Source: Fonticula alba ATCC 38817 (Eukaryota; Protista; Nucleariida). Taken from it: DNA of 64,000 nucleotides. Position 1 is the first letter of the stretch, and each line of letters starts with the position of its first letter. The position numbers and the translations under genes were made by a program. The notes below the pieces were generated by a model. The model did not search any database. It saw only the letters and a program-made list of their open reading frames with translations, and was not told the origin of the DNA. This document shows, piece by piece, positions 23,096 through 63,900 of this stretch. Location: NCBI GenBank assembly GCA_000388065.2, contig KB932201.1; one strand, 5' to 3'.

Positions 23096-24344
23096 ATGGC
23101 CATCACCAACAGCACGCAGATTCGCCTGCCCACTCACATCAAGCCGGAGCACTATGGTGCGAAACTGCTCATACATATATTTCCATAGCTCCCTCTTCTC
23201 CCAGCCCGCATATTGGCCTTGCTCACTCATCCTGCTCGTGCCGGGCTCCTCTTTCTGCCTCCAATGCCCTGCCCCCTCCGCCGGCCGGAACACAGATGTC
23301 TTCATCAAGCCCGATCTCAAGGACTTTGTCTTCTCCGGCACGGTGTCCATCCTGGTGGATGTGACCCAGACCTCCGAGGAGATCTGCCTGCACTCATTGG
23401 AGCTTGAGGTGACCGATGTCACCCTGGCCGCGGTGTCTGGCGAGGCCCTCCCCGCGCCGGCCAGCATGACCTCCAGCCCGGACTTCGACTTCCTGCACCT
23501 GCGCTGGGCCGCCCCCCTGCCGGCTGGCAAGTACCTGCTGGGCATGAAGTTTGCCGGCAAACTGACCGACCAGATGGCCGGGCTCTATCGCAGCGAGTAC
23601 AAGTCCGCCTCCGGCGAGAAGCGCTACCTGGCCGTGACGCAGTTCGAGGCCACCGACGCCCGGCGTGCCTTCCCCTGCTGGGATGAGCCCTCTTTCAAGG
23701 CGACCTTCTCGGTGACGGTCGACGTGCCGGCCGACCTGGTGGCTCTGTCCAACATGCCGGTCACCGGGGAGAAGCCCTCCTCGACGGATGGCCGCAAGGT
23801 GGTGGCCTTTGACCGGTCCCCCCGCATGTCTACCTACCTGCTGGCCCTCTTTGTCGGGGAGGCCGAGTACGTGGAGGATGTCACTCGGGCCGGGGTTCCG
23901 GTGCGGGTGTACACCCCGATCGGCCTCAAGGACCAGGGCCTGTTCGGCCTGCAGGTGGCTCGTGACGCGCTGGACTTCTTTGCGGAGTTCTTCAGCACCC
24001 CCTATCCCCTGCCCAAGCTGGATTTGATCGCCGTGCCGGACTTCGCCGCCGGTGCCATGGAGAACTGGGGCCTGGTCACCTTCCGTGAAATTTATCTCCT
24101 GTGCCATGAGCAGCGGACCAGCGCTCGCGCGCGCCAGGAGCTGGCCTATGTGGTGTGCCATGAGCTTGCGCACATGTGGTTCGGCAACCTGGTCACCATG
24201 GACTGGTGGACGCACCTGTGGCTGAATGAGGGTGCGTCTTCATGCCTGCTCGGCTATCCGGGCGGCAATGTCCCTTTTTTTCTGTTTGCATTCGCGCTTC
24301 ATCCCCGCTCTCGAGCCTTGCCGCCCTTCCCGGCTCCTCATCCT

Positions 24345-24376
<32 letters not shown>

Positions 24377-25809
24377 CCGGCCCTGCGCTGACTCCGCGAA
24401 CACCCGCATCCCCTTTGTCTGTCATGGCGGTGGTCCATTCTCGCAACCTCGTGGGGGGAAAAAATGTCAAAAAAAACATCCAGGCTTCGCCACCTATGTC
24501 GGCTGGCTGGCTGTCGACAAGCTCTTCCCCGAGTGGGACATCTGGACGCAGTTCATGTTCACCGAGCAGGGCGAGGCCATGTCCATGGACGCCCTGCAGT
24601 CCTCCCACCCGGTGGAGGTCCCGGTCACCACCACGGCTCAGATCAACCAAATCTTCGACCCCATTTCCTACAGCAAGGGCGCCACTCTGATCCGCATGCT
24701 GGCCACGCACATGGGCCCGCAGGAGTTCCAGACCGGGCTGAGCCACTACATCAAGAAGGTACGCCGAGAGCCCGCGCTCCTTGCTGGGGTCTTCCCTCTG
24801 TCCCCCTTTCCGGCTCTCGGGCCAACATGCCTGGCGCTGCTGGCTACTTACTTCGCGGCCTCCCTCGACAATGTCTGCCTTGGCCCGCCGGCGGCCATTG
24901 CACTTGTCTTGCCTGCTGGCCGGCCCCCATGCAGTTCACCTATCAGAACACGGAGACCAACGACCTGTGGGAGGCCATGTCCACCGCGGTCAGCGGCCTG
25001 GATCTGACGTCCATGATGAACGATTGGATTCGCATCACCGGCTACCCGGTGGTGACGGTGACCCCGGGCGAGGCTGGTGCTCTCACGGTCCAGCAGGACC
25101 TGTATCTGGCCTCCGGTGCGGCGTCCGGCTGTGCCTCCCTCTGGACCATCCCGCTGCTGACGACGTCTCTTAATGCTCCGGGGCCGCTGCAGCAGCCGCA
25201 GCTGTACGCCAAGGGTCCCGTGCTGGCCGAGAAGACCCAGCCCCTGACGGGCACCGCCGCGCCCCCGATGAAGGTGCGCAGCTTGCCATGTCCCTTGCCC
25301 CTTCCTCTTCGCCTTGGGCTCCTCTCGGTCCTCCTGCATGCTCTGCCCCCTTTTGCCATATGCTCATGCGGTGCCCCCTTCGCCTTGCCTGTGCGCTCCC
25401 TCCCCTCCGGGCATTGCCACGCATTCGTGCGCATTCTCGCGACCAGCTCAACCGTGATGGTATTGGCTTCTACCGCGTCAACTATCACCCCACCCTGGTG
25501 GCCGGACTGATCAGTGCCATTGCTGAGAACCCCACCACCGCCTTCGCCCATGGTGACCTGGTCAACCTGGTGAAGGACTTCTTTGCCCTCGCTGCATCCG
25601 GGCACTCCTCCATCAAGCACTTCCTGGACCTGCTGCAGGCCCTCCGCGGCGCTTCGGTGGGCTTTGCTTGGGAGGCAATTGCTGCCACCCTGGGCGCTTT
25701 GCGGTACGTGAGAGTCCTATTTTCATTCCTTTTTCCCGTCCCCCCCGCTCAAGAGCCCACTCACTCTTCCTCGCTGTCTTTCCTCCCCCCCCCCCTCCCT
25801 TGGTGGACG

Positions 25810-31081: not shown

Positions 31082-33456
31082 TTAGCGGCACTCCCAAAGC
31101 TTGATGTCTTGGTTGACAGAGCCAGTGGCGAGCAGCGGACTGGTCAGGCAGAAGTCCAGGCTGGTGACAAAATGCGAGTGAGCCTCGATTGTTTTGATGC
31201 TGTGTGCGTATGTGAAAGGTCAGTCAGCGGAAAGGGGCGAATCAGACAATGGGTAGCATGCGGTACTTAAAGCCACAAGGAACGGGCGATGGGGGAGGGA
31301 GGGGGGGGGGGGAGAGAGAGGAGCACGGACCACCGGCCGTTGGAGAGATCCCATATCCGGAGGGTTTTATCATCTGCGACTGACAGGAGGAATTTACCGG
31401 ACGGGTGGAAGGCCAGCGCTCGGACCCAGTTATCGTGGCCGTTCTAATGGAAAGGGGCGAACGGGGGATCAGTGAGAGGAGGAGGAGTTGGATTTAGGAA
31501 GTGAGAAGTGGGGAGAAAGAGAGAGAGAGAGAGAGAGGAAGAGAAAGAAGGAGGAAAGGAGAGTCAGTAAGAAAGGATACTGTGGGGATGTATGCCGTTT
31601 GTACAGGGACATTGAGGGGAACATGGGTGTCTGCCACGCACAAAGGTATGGACACACTGGCCAGTCCGAGTGTCCCAGAGCTTGATTGTCCGATCACGAC
31701 TGCCAGTGGCCACGTAGTGCAGGCTCTCCTGGACCGCGGGACCATCGCCCTCAGCGGTGGTGTCAGTGCCGTCAGGCGAGCCAGGCACGGCACTTTCACG
31801 CGCCGCTCGCCGTGCCGCCGCTGCGGTTACCTTCGGCAAGCCGAGGAGCTCACGTAGGGGAGCCTCGGCCAGGTGGGGCGCCCAGACCACGCACTCCACC
31901 ACATGTGAGTGACCGCCCATGGTCTGCAGGCAGTTGCCTGTCCGGGTGTCCCAAATCTTGACCAGCTGCATGTGTTTGTGCGCATTCGCGTCATATAAAT
32001 GGGGAGGAGGAGGGAAAGAGGGGAGAGAGAGAGAGAAGGACATGCGAGTCGCATGAGGGAAACATGAGGCACGGGGTAAGAATGCGTGGGTTTGCGCCAG
32101 TGGAGGAAGACAGGGGTGGACGGGGCGAGAGAGGGAGAGAGAGAGAGAGATGCGGAAGGGGAAGCGGAAATACCACGACAAAGGGGAAGGGGAGACAACA
32201 AAGCGCACCTGGTCATTGGAGCACGAGGCGATGAATGCCCCGGCATGGGAGGGAATCGCCCGGCGAACCCAATCCGAATGGGCCGAGGTGATCGTGCGGA
32301 CACAGTGGCCGGAAGTGATGTTCCAAATGCGGATGGTGTTGTCCCGCGAGGCAGACACCAAGAGCTCACCGCGCGGCTGGATGAAAGCCACCGATGACAC
32401 ATTGTGATCGTGGCCGATGAGTGTCCGCACGCAGGTGTAGTCGTCCGACGCGTCCCAGAGCTTGATGGTCAAGTCGGCCGAACACGAGGCTGAGGAGGTG
32501 GGAGAGCCGAAGGGGATGAAAGACAGGAACATTAGCGGTGGCGGTGGGGGATGGAGGGTTGTGAGCGCCCGGAAGGAGGCAGGGGAGGGGCGAGGGAGGG
32601 AGAGAGAGAGAGAGAGAGAGAAAGAAAGAAAGGGAGGGAGGACGCACCAAGAAGATTGCCATTCGGGCTGTATGCAAGGTCCTGCACGGTGTTTGTATGG
32701 CCACGACAAGTCCGCTCGAGATGCCCGGTATCATAGTCCCAGAGCTTGATGGTGGCATCTTCGGAGGAGGAGGCTGGAGGGGAGTGGAAGGAGTCAGCAC
32801 GCTATTTGGGGTACATACACACACACACACACACACATGGGCGCCCATGCATTTGCCAGGGCGATGGCGGCATACCAACAACGGTATAGACCGGGTGGAA
32901 AGACACCTGGGTAACGGGGCTCCGGTGACCAGTGAGGATGAACTTTTCGGGAGCACTGTCGGCAGGGCGGACAGGGTCAGTTGCTGGAAAGGGGAGAGAG
33001 AGAGAGAGAGAGAGAGAGAGGCGGGAAGGGTGTAGGAAGGAGGCGCACCGAGGGAGCCAATCGCGTGTGGAGGTATCGACGCGCACAGGGGCGGCTGCCA
33101 GCTCGGTCTGGAGCTCGGCCACCTGCTTCTCCAGCTCGATCACCTTGCGCTGGAGACGGACCACCGATGTCCACTTCTTCTCCAACAGCGAGGCGAACTT
33201 GGTCGAGGAAAAGGTTGCGGAGTCGGCCGGGTCCACACCGTCAAGGGGGACCTCGCGTGCGAAGGCCGCGGCCGACTCGCCCAGGCCATTCTGGTGAAGG
33301 TATGAGAGGATCGAGAAATTGCTGTATCCCGGGAGGAAGCGCGTCAGTGGGATGGAGGGCGAATGTGGGTCAAGGAAGCAAGCAATCCAAGTGAGGGACA
33401 GGCACGCACAGCTCCTCTTGCTGACGGGATGTCAGGATGGAGCGGGATTGGGCCAT
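31082..33456 (-). CDS. LIS1: Dynein regulator LIS1 / NudF / Pac1, 8 exons
   Basis: [16 protein letters not shown]|NFSILSYL (LisH), [20 protein letters not shown] coiled coil, [19 protein letters not shown], seven WD40 repeats, C-terminal [11 protein letters not shown]...DIKLWECR*. Confidence 0.97.
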
Positions 33457-36386: not shown

Positions 36387-36961
36387 CACATGGGTCCCGG
36401 TGCAAGTTTACGTACTCCCCCCCCCCCCCCCTCCCCACAACCCAATCACCTTGACCATGATAAAACACTCCACTATGCATCACAGCAGGTAGGCTGTCAA
36501 AGAGAGAGAAAAAAAAAAGAAGAGGTCGGGGCACAAGCAGGGAGAGCAAGTGGGAGGTAGGCTCAATCTATTAACAGTCAACAAGTCCAACCTGTGCATG
36601 TGCATCGCCGGGGCGTGTTCTCCCTTTTTTGTACACGCCGCAGAGCTGGCGTTGGGGGGTTCTCGGGAGAAGAGACGACGTCTGCAAGGGCAGCTCGGAC
36701 ACGGAAATAAAGGAGCGAGGGAGTGGGGGGGNNNNNNNNNNNNNNNNNNNNNNNNNNNNNNNNNNNNNNNNNNNNNNNNNNNNNNNNNNNNNNNNNNNNN
36801 NNNNNNNNNNNNNNNNNNNNNNNNNNNNNNNNNNNNNNNNNNNNNNNNNNNNNNNNNNNNNNNNNNNNNNNNNNNNNNNNNNCGGGGCTCCGGTGACCAG
36901 TGAGGATGAACTTTTCGGGAGCACTGTCGGCAGGGCGGACAGGGTCAGTTGCTGGAAAGGG

Positions 36962-36996
<35 letters not shown>

Positions 36997-37015
36997 GGGG
37001 GGGGCGAATATCATC

Positions 37016-38131
37016 TTAGATATCGCAGCAACGATCGATCGGCTCGTTGAAGATACCCTGATCCGGACCAGTCTGGGCGGCCGGGCCACAGTGGAGACGG
37101 ACACGGGAAAGGGCACTGGCGGCGGCGGCCTGGCAGGCCAGGCGGCCAACGGCCAAGCCGATGACCACCGAAATGAAGAGGCCAGCGTGGTAGGTCATGA
37201 TCAGGAGCATCACCGCATAGGCCAGAGCGATGGCCGCAGCGAGGAGGAGGAAGTTGCCCACATGCCAGAGGGCAGTGCGCTTCATCGGGGCACGACGTCC
37301 ATTGCCGGACAGGATGGGCGCCTCGGCGGCCGAATCGTAGTTGAGGACCTTCTCGGAGGAGGGGGACGCGTTGTTGGAAGTGCCAGTGGCAGGGGCACCA
37401 GAGCCACCGGCCACGCGGGCCGCCGCCATGGAGGGGCACTTGCTGGTGCTGCCAGAGGGGGTGCTAGCCGAAACAAGGTACCCGCGCAGGGCGACAATGG
37501 CCTCAAGCAGGAAGCACAGCACAATGGTGCCGATGCAGGCGCCAATCACGCGAGCCTGGCTGGTCAGGTCCCAGTCGACGAAGAGGAAGCGCACGCAGGT
37601 CTGCCCCGGGCCACCAAAGGAGAAGCCGTTCAGCATGACGGTGGCACCGGTGCAGTAAGCCGGAGCCGGGGGGTGGTGCGAGGAGTCGCTGCTGCCAGGC
37701 TCACCACCGGCCGGGGCCAGGTACTTGTTCGGGTCCTCGGAGAACATGCGGGCGCAGCCAGCGCTGCAAGTCCACACACTCTGGCCGTTGCGAATCTCAG
37801 CACGATGGGCATGGGCATCACGGTGAGCGGGGTCCGGGGCGGTCATGCCGCACACCGGGCAGTGTGCCGGCTCGAGATCCGAATCGAAGGCCTCAGCAGG
37901 GCCAGTCGCCTCGCCAACAACAACCAGAGACGGGTCCGCACGCTCGGCCTTGTGGCCCATGCCGCAGAAGAGGGTGCGCTGGCCGTGCTTCCAGAGGACG
38001 GGGTTTTCCTCGATGGCATCCATGCCGCACGAGGGGCAGGTGGGCATGCGAGCATCAGCCATGGGGGCCGTCATGAGGAAGGCCCCGAGGACGGTCAGCA
38101 TGACGGCCAGCAGGGCGAAGAGGGGAAACAT
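37016..38131 (-). CDS. CTR: Ctr (SLC31) copper transporter with a signal peptide and two N-terminal YHS/TRASH-like domains; intronless, about 371 aa
   Basis: FLFVDW..GACIGTIVLCFLLE (TM1), VMLLIMTY (MxxxM, TM2), GLAVG (GxxxG, TM3), C-terminal RCCDI. N-terminal CPSCGM...FCGMGH and CPVCGM...TCSAGCARMFSEDPNKY. Confidence 0.92.
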   Translation of the reverse strand: MFPLFALLAVMLTVLGAFLMTAPMADARMPTCPSCGMDAIEENPVLWKHGQRTLFCGMGHKAERADPSLVVVGEATGPAEAFDSDLEPAHCPVCGMTAPDPAHRDAHAHRAEIRNGQSVWTCSAGCARMFSEDPNKYLAPAGGEPGSSDSSHHPPAPAYCTGATVMLNGFSFGGPGQTCVRFLFVDWDLTSQARVIGACIGTIVLCFLLEAIVALRGYLVSASTPSGSTSKCPSMAAARVAGGSGAPATGTSNNASPSSEKVLNYDSAAEAPILSGNGRRAPMKRTALWHVGNFLLLAAAIALAYAVMLLIMTYHAGLFISVVIGLAVGRLACQAAAASALSRVRLHCGPAAQTGPDQGIFNEPIDRCCDI

Positions 38132-38493
38132 GGCCGGGCGGCCGGGGGCGCGCGCGCGGCGTGGCTTGATCATGTTTGGGGTCTGTGTCCGAGGAGGGGG
38201 CGCGGTATGTGGATGGTCGGTCAGTCGGCGGGGAGATTACCGAGGTGCGTGTGTGTGTGTGTGTGTGTGTGTGCGGTAGTTGCAGGATCCGCAGCGCACG
38301 CACGAACTCTCGGCGGGAGGAGGGAAGCCGGGCGGAGAGGAGGGGGGGATGAGGCAAGAGGAGAGGCAGCTGGCGCGGCACTTTCCAGGGGGGGGGGGAG
38401 AGGGTGCTAGCTGTGGAGTGCGGTCCGAAGACAGGGTCCGAGATCTACCTCTCGCCTGTCTCCTGCCTCTCGGGCGAGGGGGCGGCTCGCCTC

Positions 38494-38524
<31 letters not shown>

Positions 38525-39005
38525 NNNNNNNNNNGGGGGGGGCGTCGGGCGGAGGTCCCACGTTTACGATGCCCAGCACCCGCTCTCAACCGACATGCCG
38601 GCCCAGTTTGCTGCCGCCCCCGACCGGAGGCCGTAATTTGGCGCTAATTCCTACTGAGACGCAGGTGCGTTGCCCAGCCGGTGGGACCGACCGCCGGTGC
38701 CCGTGCACACCTTCACAGGGGTGGGGATACGTTCGGGGCTTGGTGAGAGGGAGCCCACAGACCCGGGAAGGGGGGCTAGGGGGGGGGGATTGCTCGCGAG
38801 AGTGGCGCCGTGCGACACCCCCGCCACGAAGGGTGCGGCTCTCCAACGTACATGGACACGGGGCAGTTGTGGTGGCCGTCGGAATGTCTGATGTGATTGG
38901 ACCAAGGGCGAAAAAAGGGCCGGAGGAAAGCGGCCCCCGGAGGGAGGATATCCACACACGTGCACACCCCGACGCTCGTTTGTCCCGATCGTCTGATCCC
39001 TCTCG

Positions 39006-40705: not shown

Positions 40706-41639
40706 TTACTTCTTGCCGGCGTCAGTGATATCCTCCTGCTCGGGGGCGGCGACGGCATCCTCAGCCGACATCGTCTCCTCCACACGAGTAACCTGGCTCT
40801 GGCGCGCGGCAGCACGCTTGAGCTCGGCCGCCTGGGCAATCTCGCGCTCCTGGGCCAGACGCTGCTCACGGCGCTGGATGGCCGCCTGGCGCTCCTGGTA
40901 CGTGCGCAGAACCGGCACCACATCCAGCGGGAAGCGCTCGTCATCCTGGTCGCGCAGGTAGTACAGCTTGGACCGGCGGGCCCGGTACGGGCGCATGACC
41001 TCGAGCTTGGTGATGAGCGGCGAGAACACCGGCACGGTGACCTCGATGATCTCGCTGTCACCACTGCCCGAGGTGTCGGACATGTCCACGCGCATGAGGA
41101 TATTCGAGCCAAGCTGCTTGCGGCGCACGGCCAGCACCGTCCCCAGCAGGGTGGTGAAGCTGGCCTGGTCGTCGTTCTTCTTGCTGATGCGGTAGGTCAC
41201 CGAGACGATGGCCCCAGCGGAGAGGCCCTTCGGGTTGGAGTCCTTCAGGAGCTCGGTGCGGCGCCGCATCTCCGGAGTGGAGTTCATCTGCTCGTGGTTC
41301 AGGAACTGCAGCATGTTGAAGGAGCCGAGATCGAAGCCGCGGCTACGGGCATACTGGTTGGCGTCCTGGCGGCGGGCTGGAGGGAGGGGCATATGGTCGG
41401 AGGGGGGGGGGGGGTGGAGGGGGCGCATGTGTGAATACCAGAGGAGAGGAGGAAGAGCAGCAGTCAAGGCGGAGGCAGGAGGACGCACCCTTGGCGCGAG
41501 TGAAAGAGATGCCACGAGCGATGGTGGTGGCAGTGGCACCGCCCAGGGGGGTCGCCACGACGGCGGCGGCGGCGGGGGCCCGGGCCAGGGCAGCCAGGCC
41601 GAGGGCTGGGCGGGCAATCTGACGAACCGAAGCGAACAT
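40706..41639 (-). CDS. MRPL19: Mitochondrial ribosomal protein bL19m (Img1 / MRPL19), 2 exons
   Basis: Presequence MFASVRQIARPALGLAALAR; AGAIVSV; LGTVLAVRRKQLGSNILMR; FSPLITKLEV; RARRSKLYYLRD. Confidence 0.9.
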
Positions 41640-41730
41640 AGCGGGCGCTGGATCCAAAAGGGGGCGGGCCCAGCAGTCTGACAAGGAGGGAGGGGCGTGC
41701 GCGGGTGAGTGTGTGCGTGGTGGTGAGGAA

Positions 41731-41783
<53 letters not shown>
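41731..41783. repeat. Poly-G tract (53 nt)
   Basis: Uninterrupted G run about 90 nt upstream of the MRPL19 ATG. Confidence 0.85.
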
Positions 41784-43109
41784 CGAGGGGCAAGGGATGG
41801 GAGCGGTGGCGGCAGCAGCAATCAGGGCGGAAGTGTGAAAGCTGAGGGTTGCCAGAGAGGAGGCGATGGGGGGCCTGGGAAGCGCTGATCATGGGGATGC
41901 ATCGATCCCCAGATGACGGCCGCGACAACGGTGCCAGGACACAAGAGGCTAATGCGTGGATGTCGAGGGGGGAGGAGGAGGAGGAGGAGGAGAGGGAGGA
42001 GGAGCAGAAGGCAAGAGCAACAGGGGCAAGACATACAAAGGAGGGCGGTGCGAGGGAGAAGATGGGAGGGGGAGGAGGCAGCGGGGTGGGGATGGGCCCG
42101 GGTCCGGGGTCGAATGGGGCCGCCCAAAAGGGCGCATCGCTCCGAACGGGCAGGCTCGCAACGGAGAAGGGAAAAGGGACCGGCCAACGGGGGGGGGGGG
42201 GGGGACGTTGTCCACCTTCCGGGGCCAGGGAACTCCCATCATTCGTGGTTAGGAAATTGGTCCGGCCTCGCGTCTTGTCGGCGGGGAGAGGGAGCGAATG
42301 CGCCTGGCCCCCCCCTCCCCCCCCCCATGGCGCCAATATTCTCGCGGCGTTCAACATTGGCCGGCGGGGTGTGAATGCGCGTGGTGCGGTTCGGGCGCCG
42401 GGCCTGGTCCGTGGTCGCGGCCTTCGTGGGTGTTCCGCCCACCAGCGCACCCACCTTCATCCCCTCCTCGAAACAGAGGGAAAATGGGATTCCTCGTGTA
42501 TAGCGGCAATGTCACGCCCGGGCATCACGCCCATCCCATGATCCCCTGATCATCGCTCTGTTTTCCCGACTCCTGTTCCCAATGGACCCCGCGGTAACAG
42601 GGCACATTCCCCGGGCTTCCTGAGGGAGGGAAGAGGCCCGCAGCCCTGGAGAATGGAACGGGGCCCGGGAGAGGAAGAGAGCAGTGCGCCGGCGCCTTCG
42701 CCCCGGTCGTTGCCCCATCGGGTTTGCCTTCCGGTGCTGGACCAAAGCAGCCTGCATCGGCCTGACCACCCCCCCCCCCCCCTGCCCTCCGATGGTGAAT
42801 GGGCCCTTGACGAACTTTGGATGAAAAGGTGATCCCCCCCCGCCGAAAGGCACGGTTAAAGTGCTTGGCCATCTTCCTTGTCAGACAGCCGCCCACCCTG
42901 GCCCCGCTGTGTGCTCAAACATGGGGGCGGGTCAGATCTCTGGCCTTGCGGAGCCGGGCAGATTTTTCCCTCGGCAGATCTTCGCCCGTCCCCTCGAGCC
43001 CAGCCACTCCCCTTCATTTCCCATTCCCCTCCCCCGCGTTCGGACGTTATTTTGTTTCCGCGCATTTCTTCTGTCCTCCCCCCACCTCTCTCTCTTTCCC
43101 CCTTCCATC

Positions 43110-44378: not shown

Positions 44379-45889
44379 TCAAGACTCCAAGACCTCCTTC
44401 AACTTGTTGGCAATCCTGCGCATGGCAATTGTGGCCGGGGAGGTGGGGCACGCGTCGGCAATCGGCCGTCCCTCATCACAGGCCTTGGCTATAGTTGGGG
44501 CATGAGAATGGGAGGGAGGAGGAGAGGGTCAGGAGTCTATCTAGCCAGGCAGAGGGGGGGGGGGGGCACGAAATGCCATGAACGCACCGACACGCGGATC
44601 AATCGGAATGGACCCAAGGAAGGGGACGTCAAAGTCCTGGGCGAGGCTACGCGCGCCACCGGTGGTGGCTGGGAAGATGTCGGTGTTGATCTGTGCACGG
44701 GCGGGCTGGTGTTAAGAGGGGAAACCGCATGAGGAGGGTAGGTGTGGATGGAAGAAAGTCCGGGGGAGGGGGGATGAAGAGACTGGGAAGAGGAAAAGGA
44801 GAGAGCAAAAGCGCTGGGCAACATACGCTACAGCCGGGGCACACGAAGCCAGCCATGTTCTCGATGATGCCGAGGACCGGTAGGCCAACTCGCCGGCAGA
44901 AGTTCAGCTCACGGCGGACATCGGCCAAGGCCACCTCCTGCGGGGTAGTGACAATGACAGCGCCGAATTTGGAGCCAGCATGCGTGGCCGCGGCCTCGGG
45001 ATGCTGGGCCGTGATCTCGTTGGCCTGCTTCAAAAGCTGGACAATGGAAATGTGCTCGTCCGAGGTGCCAGGCGGGGTGTCCACCAAGAGAACATCCGTT
45101 GGCTGGTAGTCCACATCGCGGAGGAACTGCTTGATCAGCCCTGTGTGTGATATGTGCTGGCAGGTGTCAGGGAAGGGCAAAAGCGGGAGACAAACGATGG
45201 GAGGGCAAAGGGAGAGGCTGAAACAGGGATGGACCACAAAGGGGGGGGGGGAGGGGGGGAGGGACCAGGGAAAGAGAAAAAAAGCCTCCACCACTGGGGA
45301 GCAGACGGCCCGAGCCGGGCGTGGCCATGGGCGTACCGTTCTTCTTGGGGCCGCGCCAGATAACCGCATCATCGCTGCGCTCCAGCATGAAGCCCACCGA
45401 CACGGCAAAGAGGGTATCTGAGACGAAGACCGGCGAAAGGCCAGAGGCAGTGCGCTGCAGGCGCTCAGCCCCGGCGCCCAGCAGCCGGGGAGCAGACGGC
45501 CCGGTAATGTCAATATCCACCAGGCCAACATCCCAGGCGTCAGCCTCGGGATCTGGATCGAGGTCCATGTCATCATCACCGCCAGCTGCGTCGTCACCGG
45601 CATTGGGATCGGCATCGAAGCCGCCTCGCGATAGCATCCAAGCCAGCTGCGAAGAGACGGTACTCTTCCCGACACCGCCCTTGCCACTGAGCACGAGCAC
45701 CCGATGACGGACCGGGAGCATGCGCTCGGCGATGGCTGCGGCATCCGGATCGACGGCCGGCTGAGGCGGCGAGCTTGCGCAGATGCGCTGGTTGGGACAC
45801 CCAGCGCAGGCGTCCATCTTGCCGGCGGCCTCGGACGAGGTGCCGGGGCAGTCCTGCGGCGGGGGGGCGCTCAGCTCAGCGGTGGACAT
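44379..45889 (-). CDS. NBP35: Cytosolic Fe-S cluster assembly P-loop NTPase Nbp35 / NUBP1, 4 exons
   Basis: N-terminal [14 protein letters not shown] cluster motif, [60 protein letters not shown]. Confidence 0.96.
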
Positions 45890-50478: not shown

Positions 50479-54776
<4,298 letters not shown>

Positions 54777-60900: not shown

Positions 60901-63900
60901 TTCGCGCGGCTCGTGTCCAGGGTACGGCGGCCCGCTGCATCGGAGTCAGGCCTTTCGTGGGAGATCCTGGACGCTGACATGTCTGGCACCGTGGCCTGCT
61001 TCTTCCCTTGCTCCCACCAATCCTGACCTCAAATGCCGGCCGATGTTGGCCGGCTGTGCACAGTGACCTGCAATGTGCCCTGTCCCCAAGGCAAGGGCAA
61101 CTGCCTGTCCAGCCCGGATCATTGCCGCTGCATCAGCGGCTGGGATGGGCCTGCTTGCGAGACATGTGCGTCTGCTCCGGCTGCAGGAGCCCGGGCAGGG
61201 GGGGGGGGGGGGGGCCGGGAGGGGGGGGGGGGGGGGGGGGGTCGCGAAGGGAGGGGCAACCTCCGCGACTGCGAGCCGCATGCCTCACCATGCTTGGAAT
61301 GGGCCGGGGATTTTTCATCTCACTCGAGGATCGCCCCCGGGCAGGCACGAAGCCCGAAGGCGGCCCAATGTCCCTCTGCTTGCCTCTGACCGGCAATTTG
61401 TCGCGCAATCATCCCCACGACCAGTCTCCTGCCAGCCAGCCTGTGGGCCGAATGGACGATGCTCACTCGAGCGCCAACAGTGCATATGCATGACCGGATG
61501 GCGCGGGAAGGATTGCAACACCCGTGCGCATCATGAACCATTGCTTGGCCCCGGCATGTTGAGGCCCGAGGGAGGGGGGCGAGCACCCGTGGGACCAACT
61601 TTGCAGGCACCCCCAGCCAATCTGACCCACCTGCCTTTCGACCGAGCCAGCCATTTGCTTGGAACCGTGTGTCAACGGTGCATGCGTGGCTCCGGGGAAG
61701 TGTCAATGCATCTCCAGCCAGTACACCGGGAAGCAATGCGAGCGTTTGGGTATGTGCCCGGGAGGGAGATGAAGGCCACTGCCGAATTCATCAAGCGCCA
61801 GTACCACACGCGCTCTGCCACACATGTGTCGCCCCATGCCCTGCTCCTTCGCTCTCCCCTCGCCCCCCCCCCCCCCTTGGCGACCGTGCTTCGGGCCTCG
61901 ACTGACCTCGATGCCATGCGTACCATCGGCACATTCGCAGCCCCGGTGTGTGGGGACGGTAAGTGCGAGCGCCAGTCGGGCGAGTCGTGCGACTCCTGTC
62001 CGGCCGACTGTGGCGAGTGTGGCATTGGCGGCTCGGAGCGCATTGTGGTGGCCGGCGTCCGCGGCGGCCCCGATGGTGCTGGCGGCCAACCGGCGCCCGA
62101 ACACTTGGCCGGCCGCCGGATCCAGGTCCAGCCGAAGCGCCTGCTGTATGACAATGAAGAGTCTTGGCGTGCGGGCACGGGACTGAAGGTGCGCATGCAT
62201 CACTCTCTCTCTCTCCCTCCCCCTGACGGGGGTGCGGCGCCCGGCCCGAGGAGGGGGGGACTGGTGAATACTCCCCTTTTGGGGGTTGCAGCCTGGCCAG
62301 GTTGCCGGAAGGACACAATGTCTGGCTGACCCTCACATCCTGCGATCGATCCCGCCGATGTAAAATGGGCGCGTGTGGCTGCACGCGCGCGCCCGTGTCC
62401 ACTCGCTTGCGCCCGTGTGTATATGTGTGTGTGTGTCTATGTATTTCGTCCTGTGTCGCGACTGGTTCTCAAGTCGCGCGATCCCCTGGATAACTCGACA
62501 ACCGCCCTGCTGACCGCCGGTACGGCGGCCCTGCTGATTACGCTCCTGATGAGTGTTGTCGGCATCGGCCTGTGCTTGGCGGGCAAGCTTTCCCCCGGAG
62601 GCACGGCGACCGCGGCCGATGCCGGTGGCAGGGCGTCAGGCACATCGCGGACCGGCCGGTCGGCTCCTCGATCGGCAGACCCCTCCTCCGCCGGCCATGC
62701 AATCAGCTCGAGCACCAGCATGGGACGCTCGGCCCACATGGCCGAGAGCCTTTCCTTCCGCAGCGGCGGCCGCCGGGCGGCCACCACGGCTGCCGACACG
62801 CCGTCGCATCTCTTCCAGCACCAACCCCAGCACCAGCCGCAGCAGTCGCCCTATGGGCCGAATTATGTCGGCTCGGAAGGGACCCCTCCGGTGGGGTCGT
62901 CGGCCGGCATGGTCTCGCGCAAGTCTGCCCCGGGCGCCCACGCTCCGTCGCACTATTCCGATTGGGGAATCAACCAGCAGCAGCAGCAGCAACACCGGCC
63001 CCAGGCCAGCCATCCTCTCAAGGACCCGGGCCATATGGCCACTGGCAAGCCTCCTGGTCCGGGGAGCCAGCAAGGCGCCCCGGGGGCTCGATCTCTTTCC
63101 TGGGGCGTGCATCCGGACATTCCACAAGGTGCGGAGCCTCGCGAGAGGAGAGGCCCGGCTCGGCATTTTTTTGCCCCTCCGCCTACTGGGACAGGGGGGG
63201 AGAGAGAGAGAGAGGAAGAGAGGCAGGGGTGCTAATAGCAGCATGCTCAATCGTCCTGGCACCCCAACTTACCGGCATTGCGATCGGTCGCGTCCCCCTC
63301 ACGCCCTGGCGTATAGCCCGGGAAAATCCCCGACGCATGACCTCCGGATTGGATCCCATCGGGGAGGCGGTCCACCTGGGGGGCATGGGACACCCGCCTC
63401 ACCTTCAGACGCCTGCGCCCCTCCCCCAAGCGGTGGCCGCCTCGGCAACTGGTCCGGGTAGTGCGCCCCTTCGTCGGTCAGTTACCACGGAGGTCACCCC
63501 GCCGGGGATGGTCCTCCCCAAGAAGCCGGTGCTCAGTCGCCACCCGACCACGGCTGGGGTGCCGCCCCCGGCTCTTTCTGGCGGGGCGGTCCAGCCTGCC
63601 CATCTGCAGCAGCACCAGCCACTTATGGGCAGCTCTCCGCTTGCGGCCCCTCGGCAGGGACAATCCTTCCCGGAGCTCCGGCGCCACACCGGCATCCCCC
63701 TGCCGCCGTCCCTCAGTCGTACATCCACGGTGGAGGATCTCTCGGCTACGGGCGTCTCCATCGGCGGTGGTAGCAGCCACTTGAGGGGCGGCCGTAGCCT
63801 CACCTCCAGCGATGAGCCAGATCCGGCCGGCAATGTGGCTGCCACCGCACCAGTGGCCTCCGCATGGGGGACCACGCCCCTGCCGCCGGAACTGCCACCC

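What the first reader, a model, noticed from the sequence alone, without database searches (positions are those of the whole stretch)
37016..38131. Ctr copper transporter fused to two extracellular YHS/TRASH-like metal-binding domains
Seen: an intronless ORF with a cleavable-looking signal peptide (MFPLFALLAVMLTVLGAFLMTAPMADA|R). Two Cys modules follow: CPSCGM-x~18-FCGMGH, and CPVCGM-x-His-rich-x-TCSAGCARMFSEDPNKY. Then comes a complete Ctr core (MLLIM, GLAVG, terminal CC). Established: canonical Ctr proteins lack a signal peptide and capture Cu with unstructured Met/His tails. The pattern CPVCGM...CSxxC..F..DPxKY is the YHS/TRASH signature, typical of prokaryotic CopA ATPases and metallochaperones. 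Inference: a self-contained capture-and-import system in which folded, prokaryote-type domains bind or sense Cu outside the cell and hand it to the trimeric pore. Being intronless among intron-dense neighbours hints at gene transfer or retroposition.
Basis: partly seen in the sequence, partly recalled or inferred. Interest (0 to 1): 0.8.

Follow-up and report, generated by a model that had tools for sequence, protein, structure and literature searches.

The report
Copper importer with outward YHS domains
This gene encodes the genome's only detected Ctr-type copper channel, and instead of the usual floppy metal-catching tail it carries two small folded, bacterial-style YHS/TRASH metal-binding domains on its outer face; the design recurs in many protists but has barely been described.

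Summary
A minus-strand ORF (window 38173-37016, 385 aa) encodes a signal peptide, two Cys modules, a complete Ctr core and a terminal CC.

- **Ctr core:** Pfam Ctr scores E 9.5e-22. MxxxM and GxxxG align to solved Ctr1. A trimer model puts both Met on the axis.
- **YHS/TRASH modules:** this protein fails Pfam's YHS cut-off on its own. Profile comparison (98.5-98.8%), an ectodomain profile whose 102 hits almost all carry YHS, an orthologue that passes the cut-off, and a confident model whose nearest shapes are all YHS/TRASH make the call secure.
- **Not unique:** about 30 representatives share the architecture, in oomycetes, ichthyosporeans, Corallochytrium, Syssomonas, Rhodelphis, Diphylleia and Colponema. 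Secreted stand-alone versions exist.
- **Transfer hint not supported:** transcript contigs show a 121-nt GT-AG intron in the 5' UTR. Composition is ordinary, and this is the genome's only detected Ctr.
- **Literature:** a 2023 preprint notes an "unannotated N-terminal domain" on protist CTRs. I found no paper naming it YHS.

Copper capture by the modules is inferred, not shown; structural zinc is the main rival. Verdict: new variant of a known kind, moderate interest. The scan noted this stretch twice before, with the same reading.

The parts
38304..38377 (-). 5' UTR exon 1 (the part seen; true 5' end unknown)
   Evidence: The transcript contig of run X2 continues for 74 letters past 38182. 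Its first 30 letters match window 38304-38333 exactly. There is no ATG in this stretch if it is colinear with the genome.
38183..38303 (-). Spliceosomal intron in the 5' UTR, 121 nt, GT..AG; it contains a (CA)n microsatellite
   Evidence: The junction 38304|38182 is read from the X2 contig. GT lies at 38303-38302 and AG at 38184-38183 on the minus strand.
37016..38173 (-). Coding sequence, 385 codons plus TAA stop, uninterrupted
   Evidence: ORF list. Contigs X1 and X2 cover 37001-38182 with no differences. An identical 385-aa protein, P0001, is in the public collection.
38051..38173 (-). Signal peptide, residues 1-41: basic n-region, hydrophobic core FPLFALLAVMLTVLGAFLM, then A-D-A|R
   Evidence: Hydropathy maximum 2.43 over residues 11-41. 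N-terminal hydrophobic stretches are present in 18 of 18 full-length relatives checked. No SignalP run was available, so the cleavage site is inferred from the -3/-1 rule.
37916..38044 (-). YHS/TRASH-like module 1, residues 44-86; ligand pattern C46-x2-C49...C70-x3-H74, plus M51
   Evidence: hhalign against bacterial YHS repeats gives 98.5%. It aligns in register with the YHS repeats of P0002. Ligand conservation in the family is C 19/21, C 20/21, C 20/21 and H 16/21. The model is confident.
37712..37867 (-). YHS/TRASH-like module 2, residues 103-154; ligand pattern C105-x2-C108...C136-x3-C140, with M110 and a His-rich insert (H117, H121, H123)
   Evidence: Pfam YHS gives a partial match, E 0.0025-0.056, below the cut-off. 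hhalign gives 98.8%. Weak alignment to the YHS region of phenol hydroxylase 2inp. Conservation.
37577..37657 (-). Pre-TM1 vestibule segment, residues 173-199: C174, invariant M180, G183-F184, C193
   Evidence: M180 is present in 26/26 relatives; C174 and C193 in 24/26 each. Residues 177-185 and 194-199 lie in the predicted subunit interface.
37133..37594 (-). Ctr domain (Pfam PF04145), residues 194-347
   Evidence: E 9.5e-22, 78.6 bits against a cut-off of 25.3, covering profile positions 9-151 of 151 in one stretch.
37463..37558 (-). TM1, residues 206-237
   Evidence: Helix in the full-length model. Hydropathy 2.55. Aligns to TM1 of solved Ctr1 6m97.
37199..37273 (-). TM2, residues 301-325, carrying M322-x3-M326 (the selectivity-filter motif)
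   Evidence: Model helix. Both Met are present in 26/26 relatives. Aligned to the MLvfM of 6m97. Contacts M322-M322 and M326-M326 between copies in the trimer model.
37097..37186 (-). TM3, residues 330-359, carrying G339-x3-G343
   Evidence: Model helix. Both Gly are present in 26/26 relatives. Aligned to 6m97. Lies in the trimer interface.
37025..37030 (-). C-terminal Cys-Cys (C382, C383), predicted to be cytosolic
   Evidence: Read directly from the sequence. C is present in 23/26 and 24/26 relatives; the family consensus is D-P-C-C.

Best explanation
The gene encodes a Ctr-family (SLC31-type) trimeric Cu(I) channel. It is the only one detected in this genome, so it is probably the main copper importer.

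**Topology.** A signal peptide sends the N-terminus across the membrane. Two folded YHS/TRASH-type modules then sit on the outer (or lumenal) face, in place of the disordered Met/His tail of animal, fungal and plant Ctr1.

**Proposed path of the metal.**
1. Each module offers a Cys3His or Cys4 site beside a conserved Met. Module 2 adds a His-rich loop.
2. These sites capture copper and pass it to the invariant Met180 at the pore mouth.
3. Copper then moves through the Met322 and Met326 rings on the threefold axis.
4. It reaches the cytosolic C-terminal Cys-Cys pair, which releases it to cytosolic acceptors.

**What is shown and what is inferred.**
- Shown: the domain identities, the conservation, transcription and splicing, and membership of a protist-wide YHS-Ctr subfamily.
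- Inferred: the topology, the trimer, that the modules bind copper rather than zinc, and the hand-off.
For: **Ctr core**
- Pfam Ctr E 9.5e-22.
- MxxxM and GxxxG align to solved Ctr1 6m97.
- The full-length model hits 6m97/6m98 with probability 0.97.
- Homotrimer model: ipSAE 0.69 against a best control of 0.00. The runs agree in at least 30% of contacts and partner pLDDT is 63. The mark was reached by 21 of 30 proteins solved as pairs and 0 of 23 solved as single chains. Met322 and Met326 lie on the axis.
- Only one Ctr locus and one ectodomain locus were detected in the genome.

**YHS identity of the modules**
- BLASTP aligns them in register with the tandem YHS repeats of a CusB-like protein.
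- hhalign gives 98.5% and 98.8%.
- The Colponema orthologue passes Pfam's YHS cut-off, 43.8 bits against 30.3.
- 8 of 21 ectodomains hit YHS, which is the top family.
- The ectodomain profile finds 102 short proteins, nearly all with precomputed PF04945.
- The AlphaFold model has pLDDT 90.5 and pTM 0.83. Its ten nearest Atlas shapes are all YHS/TRASH clusters.

**Conservation and expression**
- Ligands, M180, C174, C193 and the terminal CC are conserved.
- Spliced transcript contigs with word depth of about 100-120.

**Outside support**
- A YHS domain has biochemical support as a copper-responsive module in a mycobacterial adenylyl cyclase (PMC4626032).
Against: - No metal-binding or transport data exist for this protein or any YHS-Ctr relative.
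- Cys4 and Cys3His sites in TRASH-fold proteins such as L24e hold a structural metal ion (Cd in the crystal cited in PMC4626032). The sites here may do the same.
- The YHS domain of toluene-4-hydroxylase is empty in its crystal (PMC4626032).
- Thiol sites exposed to an oxidising exterior may form disulfides.
- The trimer model places no YHS residue in a confident interface, so a hand-off geometry is not supported.
- This protein itself fails Pfam's YHS cut-off.
- PDB fold matches are weak: Z of 3 or less, and Foldseek E of 0.018 or more.
- The membrane where the protein acts is unknown.
Confidence: 0.6

Rival explanations
1. The two modules are structural zinc (or disulfide-stapled) knuckles. 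They form a rigid cap, gate, sensor or docking site on the outer face and do not act as a relay that feeds copper to the pore. Copper may be captured directly by Met180 and the pore mouth. The modules would then regulate opening or turnover, or bind another partner.
For: - The TRASH fold of L24e binds a structural ion through four Cys, and the YHS of toluene-4-hydroxylase is empty (PMC4626032).
- The family consensus Cys3His is a classic zinc-site pattern.
- The only biochemical case for YHS is a sensor, not a carrier (PMC4626032).
- No confident contact between the modules and the pore appears in the trimer model.
Against: - The modules are fused to a copper channel in many lineages.
- Bacterial YHS domains sit mostly on Cu-ATPases and Cu/Ag efflux proteins.
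- A Met follows the CxxC in 15-19 of 21 members, and this protein has a His-rich loop. These are typical copper ligands that a purely structural site does not need.
- Secreted stand-alone versions exist, which fits scavenging better than gating.
Confidence: 0.25
2. The protein works on an internal membrane (vacuole, lysosome or phagosome) like Ctr2 or COPT5. It would move copper from the lumen to the cytosol, with the YHS modules stripping copper from digested prey or stored pools in the lumen.
For: - Topology is the same for a lumenal and an external N-terminus.
- Many named carriers of the architecture are phagotrophs or osmotrophs: Colponema, Diphylleia, Rhodelphis, Syssomonas, ichthyosporeans and oomycetes.
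- Acidic, reducing lumens would suit thiol ligands.
Against: - It is the only Ctr detected in the genome, so some uptake across the cell surface would still need a carrier.
- No sorting signal was tested.
- This differs from the main reading only in location, not in mechanism.
Confidence: 0.2
3. The gene is a recent arrival by horizontal transfer or retroposition, as the reader suggested from its lack of introns.
For: - The coding sequence is uninterrupted.
- YHS domains are mostly prokaryotic.
- The closest relatives are unnamed metagenome proteins at 37-38% identity.
Against: - A spliced 121-nt GT-AG intron lies in the 5' UTR.
- GC content matches the neighbours.
- Ctr is a eukaryotic family, and this is the genome's sole detected copy.
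- 28 of 30 YHS-bearing Ctr domains group together across supergroups, which points to an old fusion (weak support).
- Both modules keep their positions in all lineages.
- Long single-exon ORFs with Pfam support occur nearby.
Confidence: 0.06

Closest known systems
Ctr1 / SLC31A1 / COPT high-affinity copper transporters (solved: salmon Ctr1, PDB 6m97 and 6m98)
   Same: Three TM helices. MxxxM in TM2 and GxxxG in TM3, aligned residue for residue to 6m97. A Met about 25 residues before TM1. A Cys motif at the cytosolic C-terminus. A predicted trimer with Met rings on the axis.
   Different: Canonical members have no signal peptide and use a disordered Met/His-rich N-terminal tail. This protein has a signal peptide and about 115 residues of folded tandem YHS/TRASH modules. 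It also has two conserved Cys (C174, C193) flanking the pore-mouth Met.
YHS domain (PF04945) and TRASH domains of bacterial and archaeal Cu-ATPases, CusB-like efflux proteins, permeases and adenylyl cyclases
   Same: The PVCGM...G..(Y/W)(F/T)C(S)..C...F...P..Y pattern, with four ligand positions. Profile-profile probability 98.5-98.8%. The nearest predicted shapes are all YHS/TRASH.
   Different: Bacterial YHS domains are cytosolic and usually start with Asp at the first ligand position (PMC4626032). Here the modules are exported, the first ligand is Cys, the fourth is His in most family members, and an invariant Gln replaces the usual residue in the G-x-Q turn. This protein scores below Pfam's cut-off.
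CTRA-CTR fusion transporters of Chlamydomonas (CTR1, CTR2), chytrids and Dictyostelium P80, and the soluble CTR3 (Strenkert et al., bioRxiv 10.1101/2023.10.19.563170)
   Same: The same design idea: folded Cys-rich extracellular domains, often in tandem, fused to the N-terminus of a Ctr, with secreted stand-alone versions of the domain. Compare P0041, P0182 and P0173.
   Different: The preprint says the extra N-terminal domain of the 'protist cluster' (example: Albugo candida) is unrelated to CTRA, and leaves it unannotated. The domain here is YHS/TRASH. Whether it is that same 'unannotated' domain is likely, since both occur in oomycetes, with a C-terminal HMA in some and with stand-alone forms. 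I could not check it because I had no Albugo or Cre05.g236039 sequence.
Oomycete Ctr proteins with a C-terminal HMA domain
   Same: Same subfamily. P0031 (Aphanomyces) and P0135 (Phytophthora boehmeriae) have degenerate YHS-like modules, the same Ctr core and the CC region. An Atlas cluster of Ctr+HMA proteins from Oomycota is the query's nearest neighbour by features.
   Different: The window's protein ends at the CC motif and has no HMA domain.

Membership tests
Ctr copper transporter family (PF04145 / SLC31) | Match to the family profile above the curated cut-off | tested here: met
   78.6 bits against a cut-off of 25.3, E 9.5e-22, profile positions 9-151 of 151. Also found in the six-frame genome search.
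Ctr copper transporter family (PF04145 / SLC31) | Three transmembrane helices, N-terminus outside, C-terminus in the cytosol | tested here: met
   Helices at 206-237, 301-325 and 330-359 in the model, with matching hydropathy peaks. The orientation is inferred from the signal peptide and the basic residues before TM2. It was not measured.
Ctr copper transporter family (PF04145 / SLC31) | MxxxM in TM2 and GxxxG in TM3 | tested here: met
   M322/M326 and G339/G343 are invariant in 26 relatives and align to the same motifs of solved Ctr1 6m97.
Ctr copper transporter family (PF04145 / SLC31) | Essential Met about 20 residues before TM1 | tested here: met
   M180 is invariant in 26/26 relatives and lies 26 residues before the TM1 helix. 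Its equivalence to the essential Met of yeast and human Ctr1 rests on position and on my knowledge of those proteins. It is not an alignment made here.
Ctr copper transporter family (PF04145 / SLC31) | Homotrimer with the pore on the threefold axis | tested here: met
   Prediction only: ipSAE 0.69 against a best control of 0.00. The mark was reached by 21 of 30 solved pairs and 0 of 23 solved single chains. The runs agree in at least 30% of contacts, and pLDDT is 63. A Ctr1 trimer has been solved, so the pass may come from the model's memory and shows likeness only.
Ctr copper transporter family (PF04145 / SLC31) | Cu(I) transport activity | not testable with these tools
   Needs uptake assays or yeast complementation.
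YHS domain (PF04945) / TRASH clan | Match of this protein to the Pfam YHS profile above the curated cut-off (30.3 bits) | tested here: not met
   13.9-18.2 bits, covering only profile positions 28-45 of module 2. The His-rich insert splits the match.
YHS domain (PF04945) / TRASH clan | Homology to bona fide YHS domains by profile methods and through orthologues | tested here: met
   - hhalign 98.5% (module 1) and 98.8% (module 2) against 48 bacterial YHS repeats.
- Orthologue P0014 scores 43.8 bits on Pfam YHS.
- 8 of 21 ectodomains hit YHS, best E 8.9e-14.
- The ectodomain profile finds 102 proteins, nearly all annotated PF04945.

Caveat: the bacterial repeats for hhalign were taken from hits to this query.
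YHS domain (PF04945) / TRASH clan | Four-ligand pattern (D/C)-x2-C ... C-x3-C | tested here: met
   Module 2 has C105, C108, C136 and C140. Module 1 has C46, C49, C70 and H74, with His in the fourth place.
YHS domain (PF04945) / TRASH clan | TRASH-type fold | tested here: inconclusive
   The model is confident (pLDDT 90.5). All ten rows of the Atlas shape search are YHS/TRASH clusters, but TM is only 0.35-0.44, with 49-83 residues aligned. Against solved structures there are only weak matches, although to the expected proteins: L24e, the C-terminal regions of phenol hydroxylase and methane monooxygenase, and AK9 repeats.
YHS domain (PF04945) / TRASH clan | Transition-metal binding | not testable with these tools
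   Needs metal analysis of the purified ectodomain.
CTRA-CTR subfamily (Strenkert et al. 2023) | N-terminal CTRA domain | not tested
   No CTRA sequence was at hand. The preprint states that the protist-cluster N-terminal domain is unrelated to CTRA.

The most novel reading that the evidence does not exclude
YHS-Ctr is an old, protist-wide subfamily of copper importers. In it, a domain known from the cytosolic side of bacterial copper pumps was recruited to the outside of a eukaryotic channel, duplicated, and also released as a secreted stand-alone protein. The subfamily would be a second, independent invention of a folded extracellular copper-capture device, beside CTRA. It would also be the 'unannotated' protist domain of the literature, and a tractable system to settle what YHS domains bind.
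Probability: 0.4. Interest if true: 0.6.

Novelty: new variant of a known kind. Interest (0 to 1): 0.5.

Why it matters
How Ctr channels collect copper outside the cell is understood only for disordered Met/His tails. A folded, conserved, two-module receptor in front of the pore is a different solution.

It is present in oomycete plant and animal pathogens and in close unicellular relatives of animals, where copper supply affects growth. Naming the domain as YHS/TRASH links it to a large bacterial family whose metal chemistry is itself poorly established. One set of experiments on a small secreted domain could therefore inform both fields.

For annotation, these proteins are currently labelled only 'Copper transport protein' or 'hypothetical protein'.

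Tried and rejected
- **Trypanosomatid guess.** I first suspected a trypanosomatid (31-Mb GC-rich genome, where an intron-free gene would be ordinary). I dropped this because neighbouring genes give only partial Pfam matches per ORF and the gene itself has a cis-spliced GT-AG intron.
- **Word-index protein search with the full protein.** It found only the protein itself and one bacterial YHS protein. The exhaustive HMMER search was needed to find the family.
- **Foldseek against PDB.** Neither model gave a match at E 0.001 or better. VIA-align gave Z of 3 or less.
- **phmmer of the ectodomain against PDB.** Only E 0.2 or worse.
- **Raw RNA-seq runs X5 and X12.** No reads were laid. These runs carry another organism code, so this is no test of expression.
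- **Organism identity.** Not established. Two papers I opened gave no genome size to compare. My guess from memory (a GC-rich 31-Mb holomycotan amoeba) is unverified and I did not use it.
- **Literature.** Searches pairing YHS or TRASH with Ctr, Ctr1, COPT or SLC31 found nothing. The library lacks most subscription journals.
- **Link to Chlamydomonas Cre05.g236039.** The ectodomain profile search returned no Chlamydomonas protein, so this link remains untested.
- **Ligand geometry.** I could not measure it because model coordinates are not exposed.
Full report
**1. What is there**

The feature is an ORF on the minus strand, window 38173-37016 (385 codons plus TAA).

Two small public runs hold contigs that cover 37001-38182 without a single difference, at word depth of about 100-120. 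One contig continues past 38182 with 74 letters. The first 30 of these match window 38304-38333 exactly and nowhere else. The skipped 121 bases begin with GT and end with AG on the minus strand. From this it follows that:
- the contigs come from spliced RNA;
- the gene is expressed;
- the gene has an intron in its 5' UTR;
- exon 2 begins 9 nt before the ATG at 38173.

The 74 nt of exon 1, if colinear with the genome, hold no ATG, so 38173 is the first AUG seen. The extra 14 residues (MIKPRRARAPGRPA) make a basic n-region before the hydrophobic core, and A-D-A|R follows. Hydropathy supports an N-terminal signal sequence. All 18 full-length relatives I checked also begin with a hydrophobic stretch.

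**2. The Ctr part**

- Pfam Ctr matches residues 194-347 at E 9.5e-22, well over the cut-off, in one uninterrupted stretch.
- The full-length AlphaFold model has three long helices, at 206-237, 301-325 and 330-359.
- The model finds the Ctr1 crystal structures 6m97/6m98 with Foldseek probability 0.97, although with weak E-values.
- phmmer aligns TM1 and the TM2-TM3 hairpin to 6m97. M322-x3-M326 and G339-x3-G343 lie on the same motifs of the solved protein.
- A three-copy model of residues 42-360 scored ipSAE 0.69 against a best control of 0.00. The runs agree in at least 30% of contacts and pLDDT is 63. The mark was reached by 21 of 30 proteins solved as pairs and 0 of 23 solved as single chains.
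- In that model M322 touches M322 and M326 touches M326 between copies. Residues 177-185 and 194-199 also lie in the interface. A Ctr1 trimer has been solved, so this shows likeness rather than proof.
- The genome (31.3 Mb, 214 contigs) has only this one Ctr match.

**3. The two Cys modules**

On its own the protein does not pass Pfam's YHS cut-off. It scores 13.9-18.2 bits against 30.3, and only for the C-terminal half of module 2. Five further lines make the YHS/TRASH call secure.

- *Pairwise alignment.* The only non-self hit of the word-index search was a CusB-like efflux protein with three Pfam YHS repeats. BLASTP aligns both modules in register with two successive repeats.
- *Orthologues.* The exhaustive HMMER search found about 30 representatives with the same layout. 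One, from Colponema, passes the YHS cut-off at 43.8 bits. YHS is the top family for the set of ectodomains, hit by 8 of 21 with best E 8.9e-14.
- *Profile against profile.* hhalign of each module's family alignment against 48 bacterial YHS repeats gives 98.5% and 98.8% over the full length. The two modules match each other at 99.6%. The bacterial repeats came from hits to this query, which is a mild circularity.
- *Profile against the big collection.* A profile of the ectodomain searched against 5.8 billion proteins returned 102 short proteins at E 1e-5 or better. Nearly all carry precomputed PF04945, often with TRASH or HMBD families.
- *Predicted fold.* AlphaFold with only 21 sequences gives pLDDT 90.5 and pTM 0.83 for residues 42-156. 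The ten nearest shapes in the ESM Atlas are all YHS/TRASH clusters.

Solved structures give only weak matches, but to the expected proteins: L24e, the C-terminal regions of phenol hydroxylase and methane monooxygenase, and YHS-like repeats of adenylate kinase 9.

The ligand positions are as follows:

| Module | This protein | Conservation in 21 family ectodomains |
|---|---|---|
| 1 | C46, C49, C70, H74 | C 19, C 20, C 20, H 16 |
| 2 | C105, C108, C136, C140 | C 21, C 18, C 19; fourth place H in 12, C in 4 |

A Met follows each CxxCG in 19 and 15 of 21 members, and a Gln is invariant in both modules. This protein alone has a His-rich insert (H117, H121, H123) in module 2.

**4. The family**

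Named carriers are:
- oomycetes: Phytophthora ramorum and P. boehmeriae, Aphanomyces, Saprolegnia;
- Holozoa: Corallochytrium, Syssomonas, Pirum, Sphaeroforma;
- CRuMs: Diphylleia, with five modules;
- Archaeplastida: Rhodelphis;
- Alveolata: Colponema;
- one MMETSP transcriptome and many metagenome contigs.

The shared consensus runs: signal peptide, module 1, module 2, F-C-x-G-x-x-V-M-x-N-G-F ... C-V, three TM helices, D-P-C-C. M180 is invariant. C174, C193 and the terminal CC are nearly so.

On a quick tree of 88 Ctr cores, 28 of 30 YHS-bearing proteins fall in one group with SH-aLRT 82. The label needs 7 changes against 25 in shuffles. Only 133 columns were kept, support is weak, and the sample was chosen by likeness to the query. 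Diphylleia and Colponema sit apart.

Secreted stand-alone tandem modules exist in Syssomonas and in dinoflagellates. Two oomycete members carry a C-terminal HMA domain, which matches an Atlas cluster of Ctr+HMA proteins.

**5. How it most likely works**

- *Shown:* domain identities, conservation, transcription and splicing.
- *From family knowledge of Ctr1:* N-terminus outside, C-terminus inside, a trimer, and Met rings as the selectivity filter.
- *Inferred:* the exported YHS modules take the place of the Met/His tail. They capture copper at their Cys/His/Met sites and pass it to M180 at the pore mouth. The metal then moves through M322 and M326 to the cytosolic CC pair.

The main rival is that the Cys3His and Cys4 sites hold structural zinc and the modules act as a cap, sensor or docking site. 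The L24e TRASH site is structural, the toluene-4-hydroxylase YHS is empty, and the one biochemical study of a YHS domain shows a copper sensor (PMC4626032). Location on an internal membrane cannot be excluded.

**6. The transfer idea**

It is not supported:
- the gene has a spliced intron;
- its GC content (about 0.65-0.68) is like its surroundings;
- a 1.85-kb uninterrupted ORF for an M1 peptidase lies in the same window;
- it is the sole Ctr detected;
- the architecture is shared across supergroups.

An ancient bacterial origin of the YHS part before the fusion remains possible and untested.

**7. Novelty**

Sequence databases hold many such proteins, labelled 'Copper transport protein', 'hypothetical protein' or, once, 'YHS domain-containing protein'.

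Strenkert et al. (bioRxiv 10.1101/2023.10.19.563170) describe the analogous CTRA-CTR fusions. They also mention C-terminal HMA domains and an 'unannotated N-terminal domain' in a protist cluster of CTRs (example: Albugo candida), which also occurs as a stand-alone protein. That description fits this domain, but I could not verify the identity.

No paper in the searchable library pairs YHS or TRASH with Ctr.

The scan noted this same stretch twice before with the same reading. Those notes are not independent evidence.

Noticed in passing
window 36761-36882 and 38525-38534; also 36985-37000 and about 38480-38524: Runs of N (assembly gaps) flank the gene on both sides, next to long C/G homopolymer tracts. 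A (CT)n tract lies just after the stop codon, and a (CA)n tract (about 38249-38273) lies inside the 5'-UTR intron. The transcript contigs stop about 22 nt past 37001, probably because of these repeats.
   Followed up: partly
P0031 (Aphanomyces astaci) and P0135 (Phytophthora boehmeriae), C-terminal about 70 residues: These oomycete members of the family carry a C-terminal HMA-like domain after the Cys motif, on the predicted cytosolic side. Their N-terminal modules are degenerate. An Atlas cluster of 81 Oomycota proteins has Ctr plus HMA.
   Followed up: partly
P0010 (Diphylleia rotans, 560 aa): It has five YHS-like modules in a row before the Ctr core. With the Colponema protein, its Ctr core groups away from the main YHS-Ctr group on the quick tree. 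This may point to a second fusion event or may be a tree artefact.
   Followed up: partly
P0041 (Syssomonas), P0182 (Alexandrium andersonii), P0173 (ENA): Stand-alone proteins of 130-175 aa with a signal peptide and two YHS-like modules but no membrane part. These are possible secreted copper binders, analogous to Chlamydomonas CTR3.
   Followed up: partly
PDB 9d2f_A (adenylate kinase 9) and 9fqr_Xf, hit by the A2 profile: The ectodomain profile's best solved matches (E 6.8e-5 and 1.8e-4) are repeated CPV...Y-F-S..-E-KF...P..Y units in axonemal radial-spoke proteins. YHS-like repeats that have lost most Cys therefore exist inside eukaryotic cilia proteins.
   Followed up: no
G000 contig C13:132909-133082, minus strand: This is the only HMA-domain match in the genome. 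It lies in a 773-aa open frame and is probably the copper P-type ATPase. No separate small HMA chaperone was detected, though the counts from this search are lower bounds.
   Followed up: no
window 23154-25007 (+), 31564-32709 (-), 40706-41821 (-), 44647-45744 (-), 51646-53178 (-), 61073-62329 (+): Neighbouring ORFs with Pfam matches: M1 aminopeptidase, WD40 (LIS1-like), mitochondrial-type ribosomal protein L19, NUBPL-like P-loop NTPase, DEAD-box helicase, and teneurin-type EGF repeats. None is related to copper. Most match only part of their family profile, which fits split genes.
   Followed up: partly
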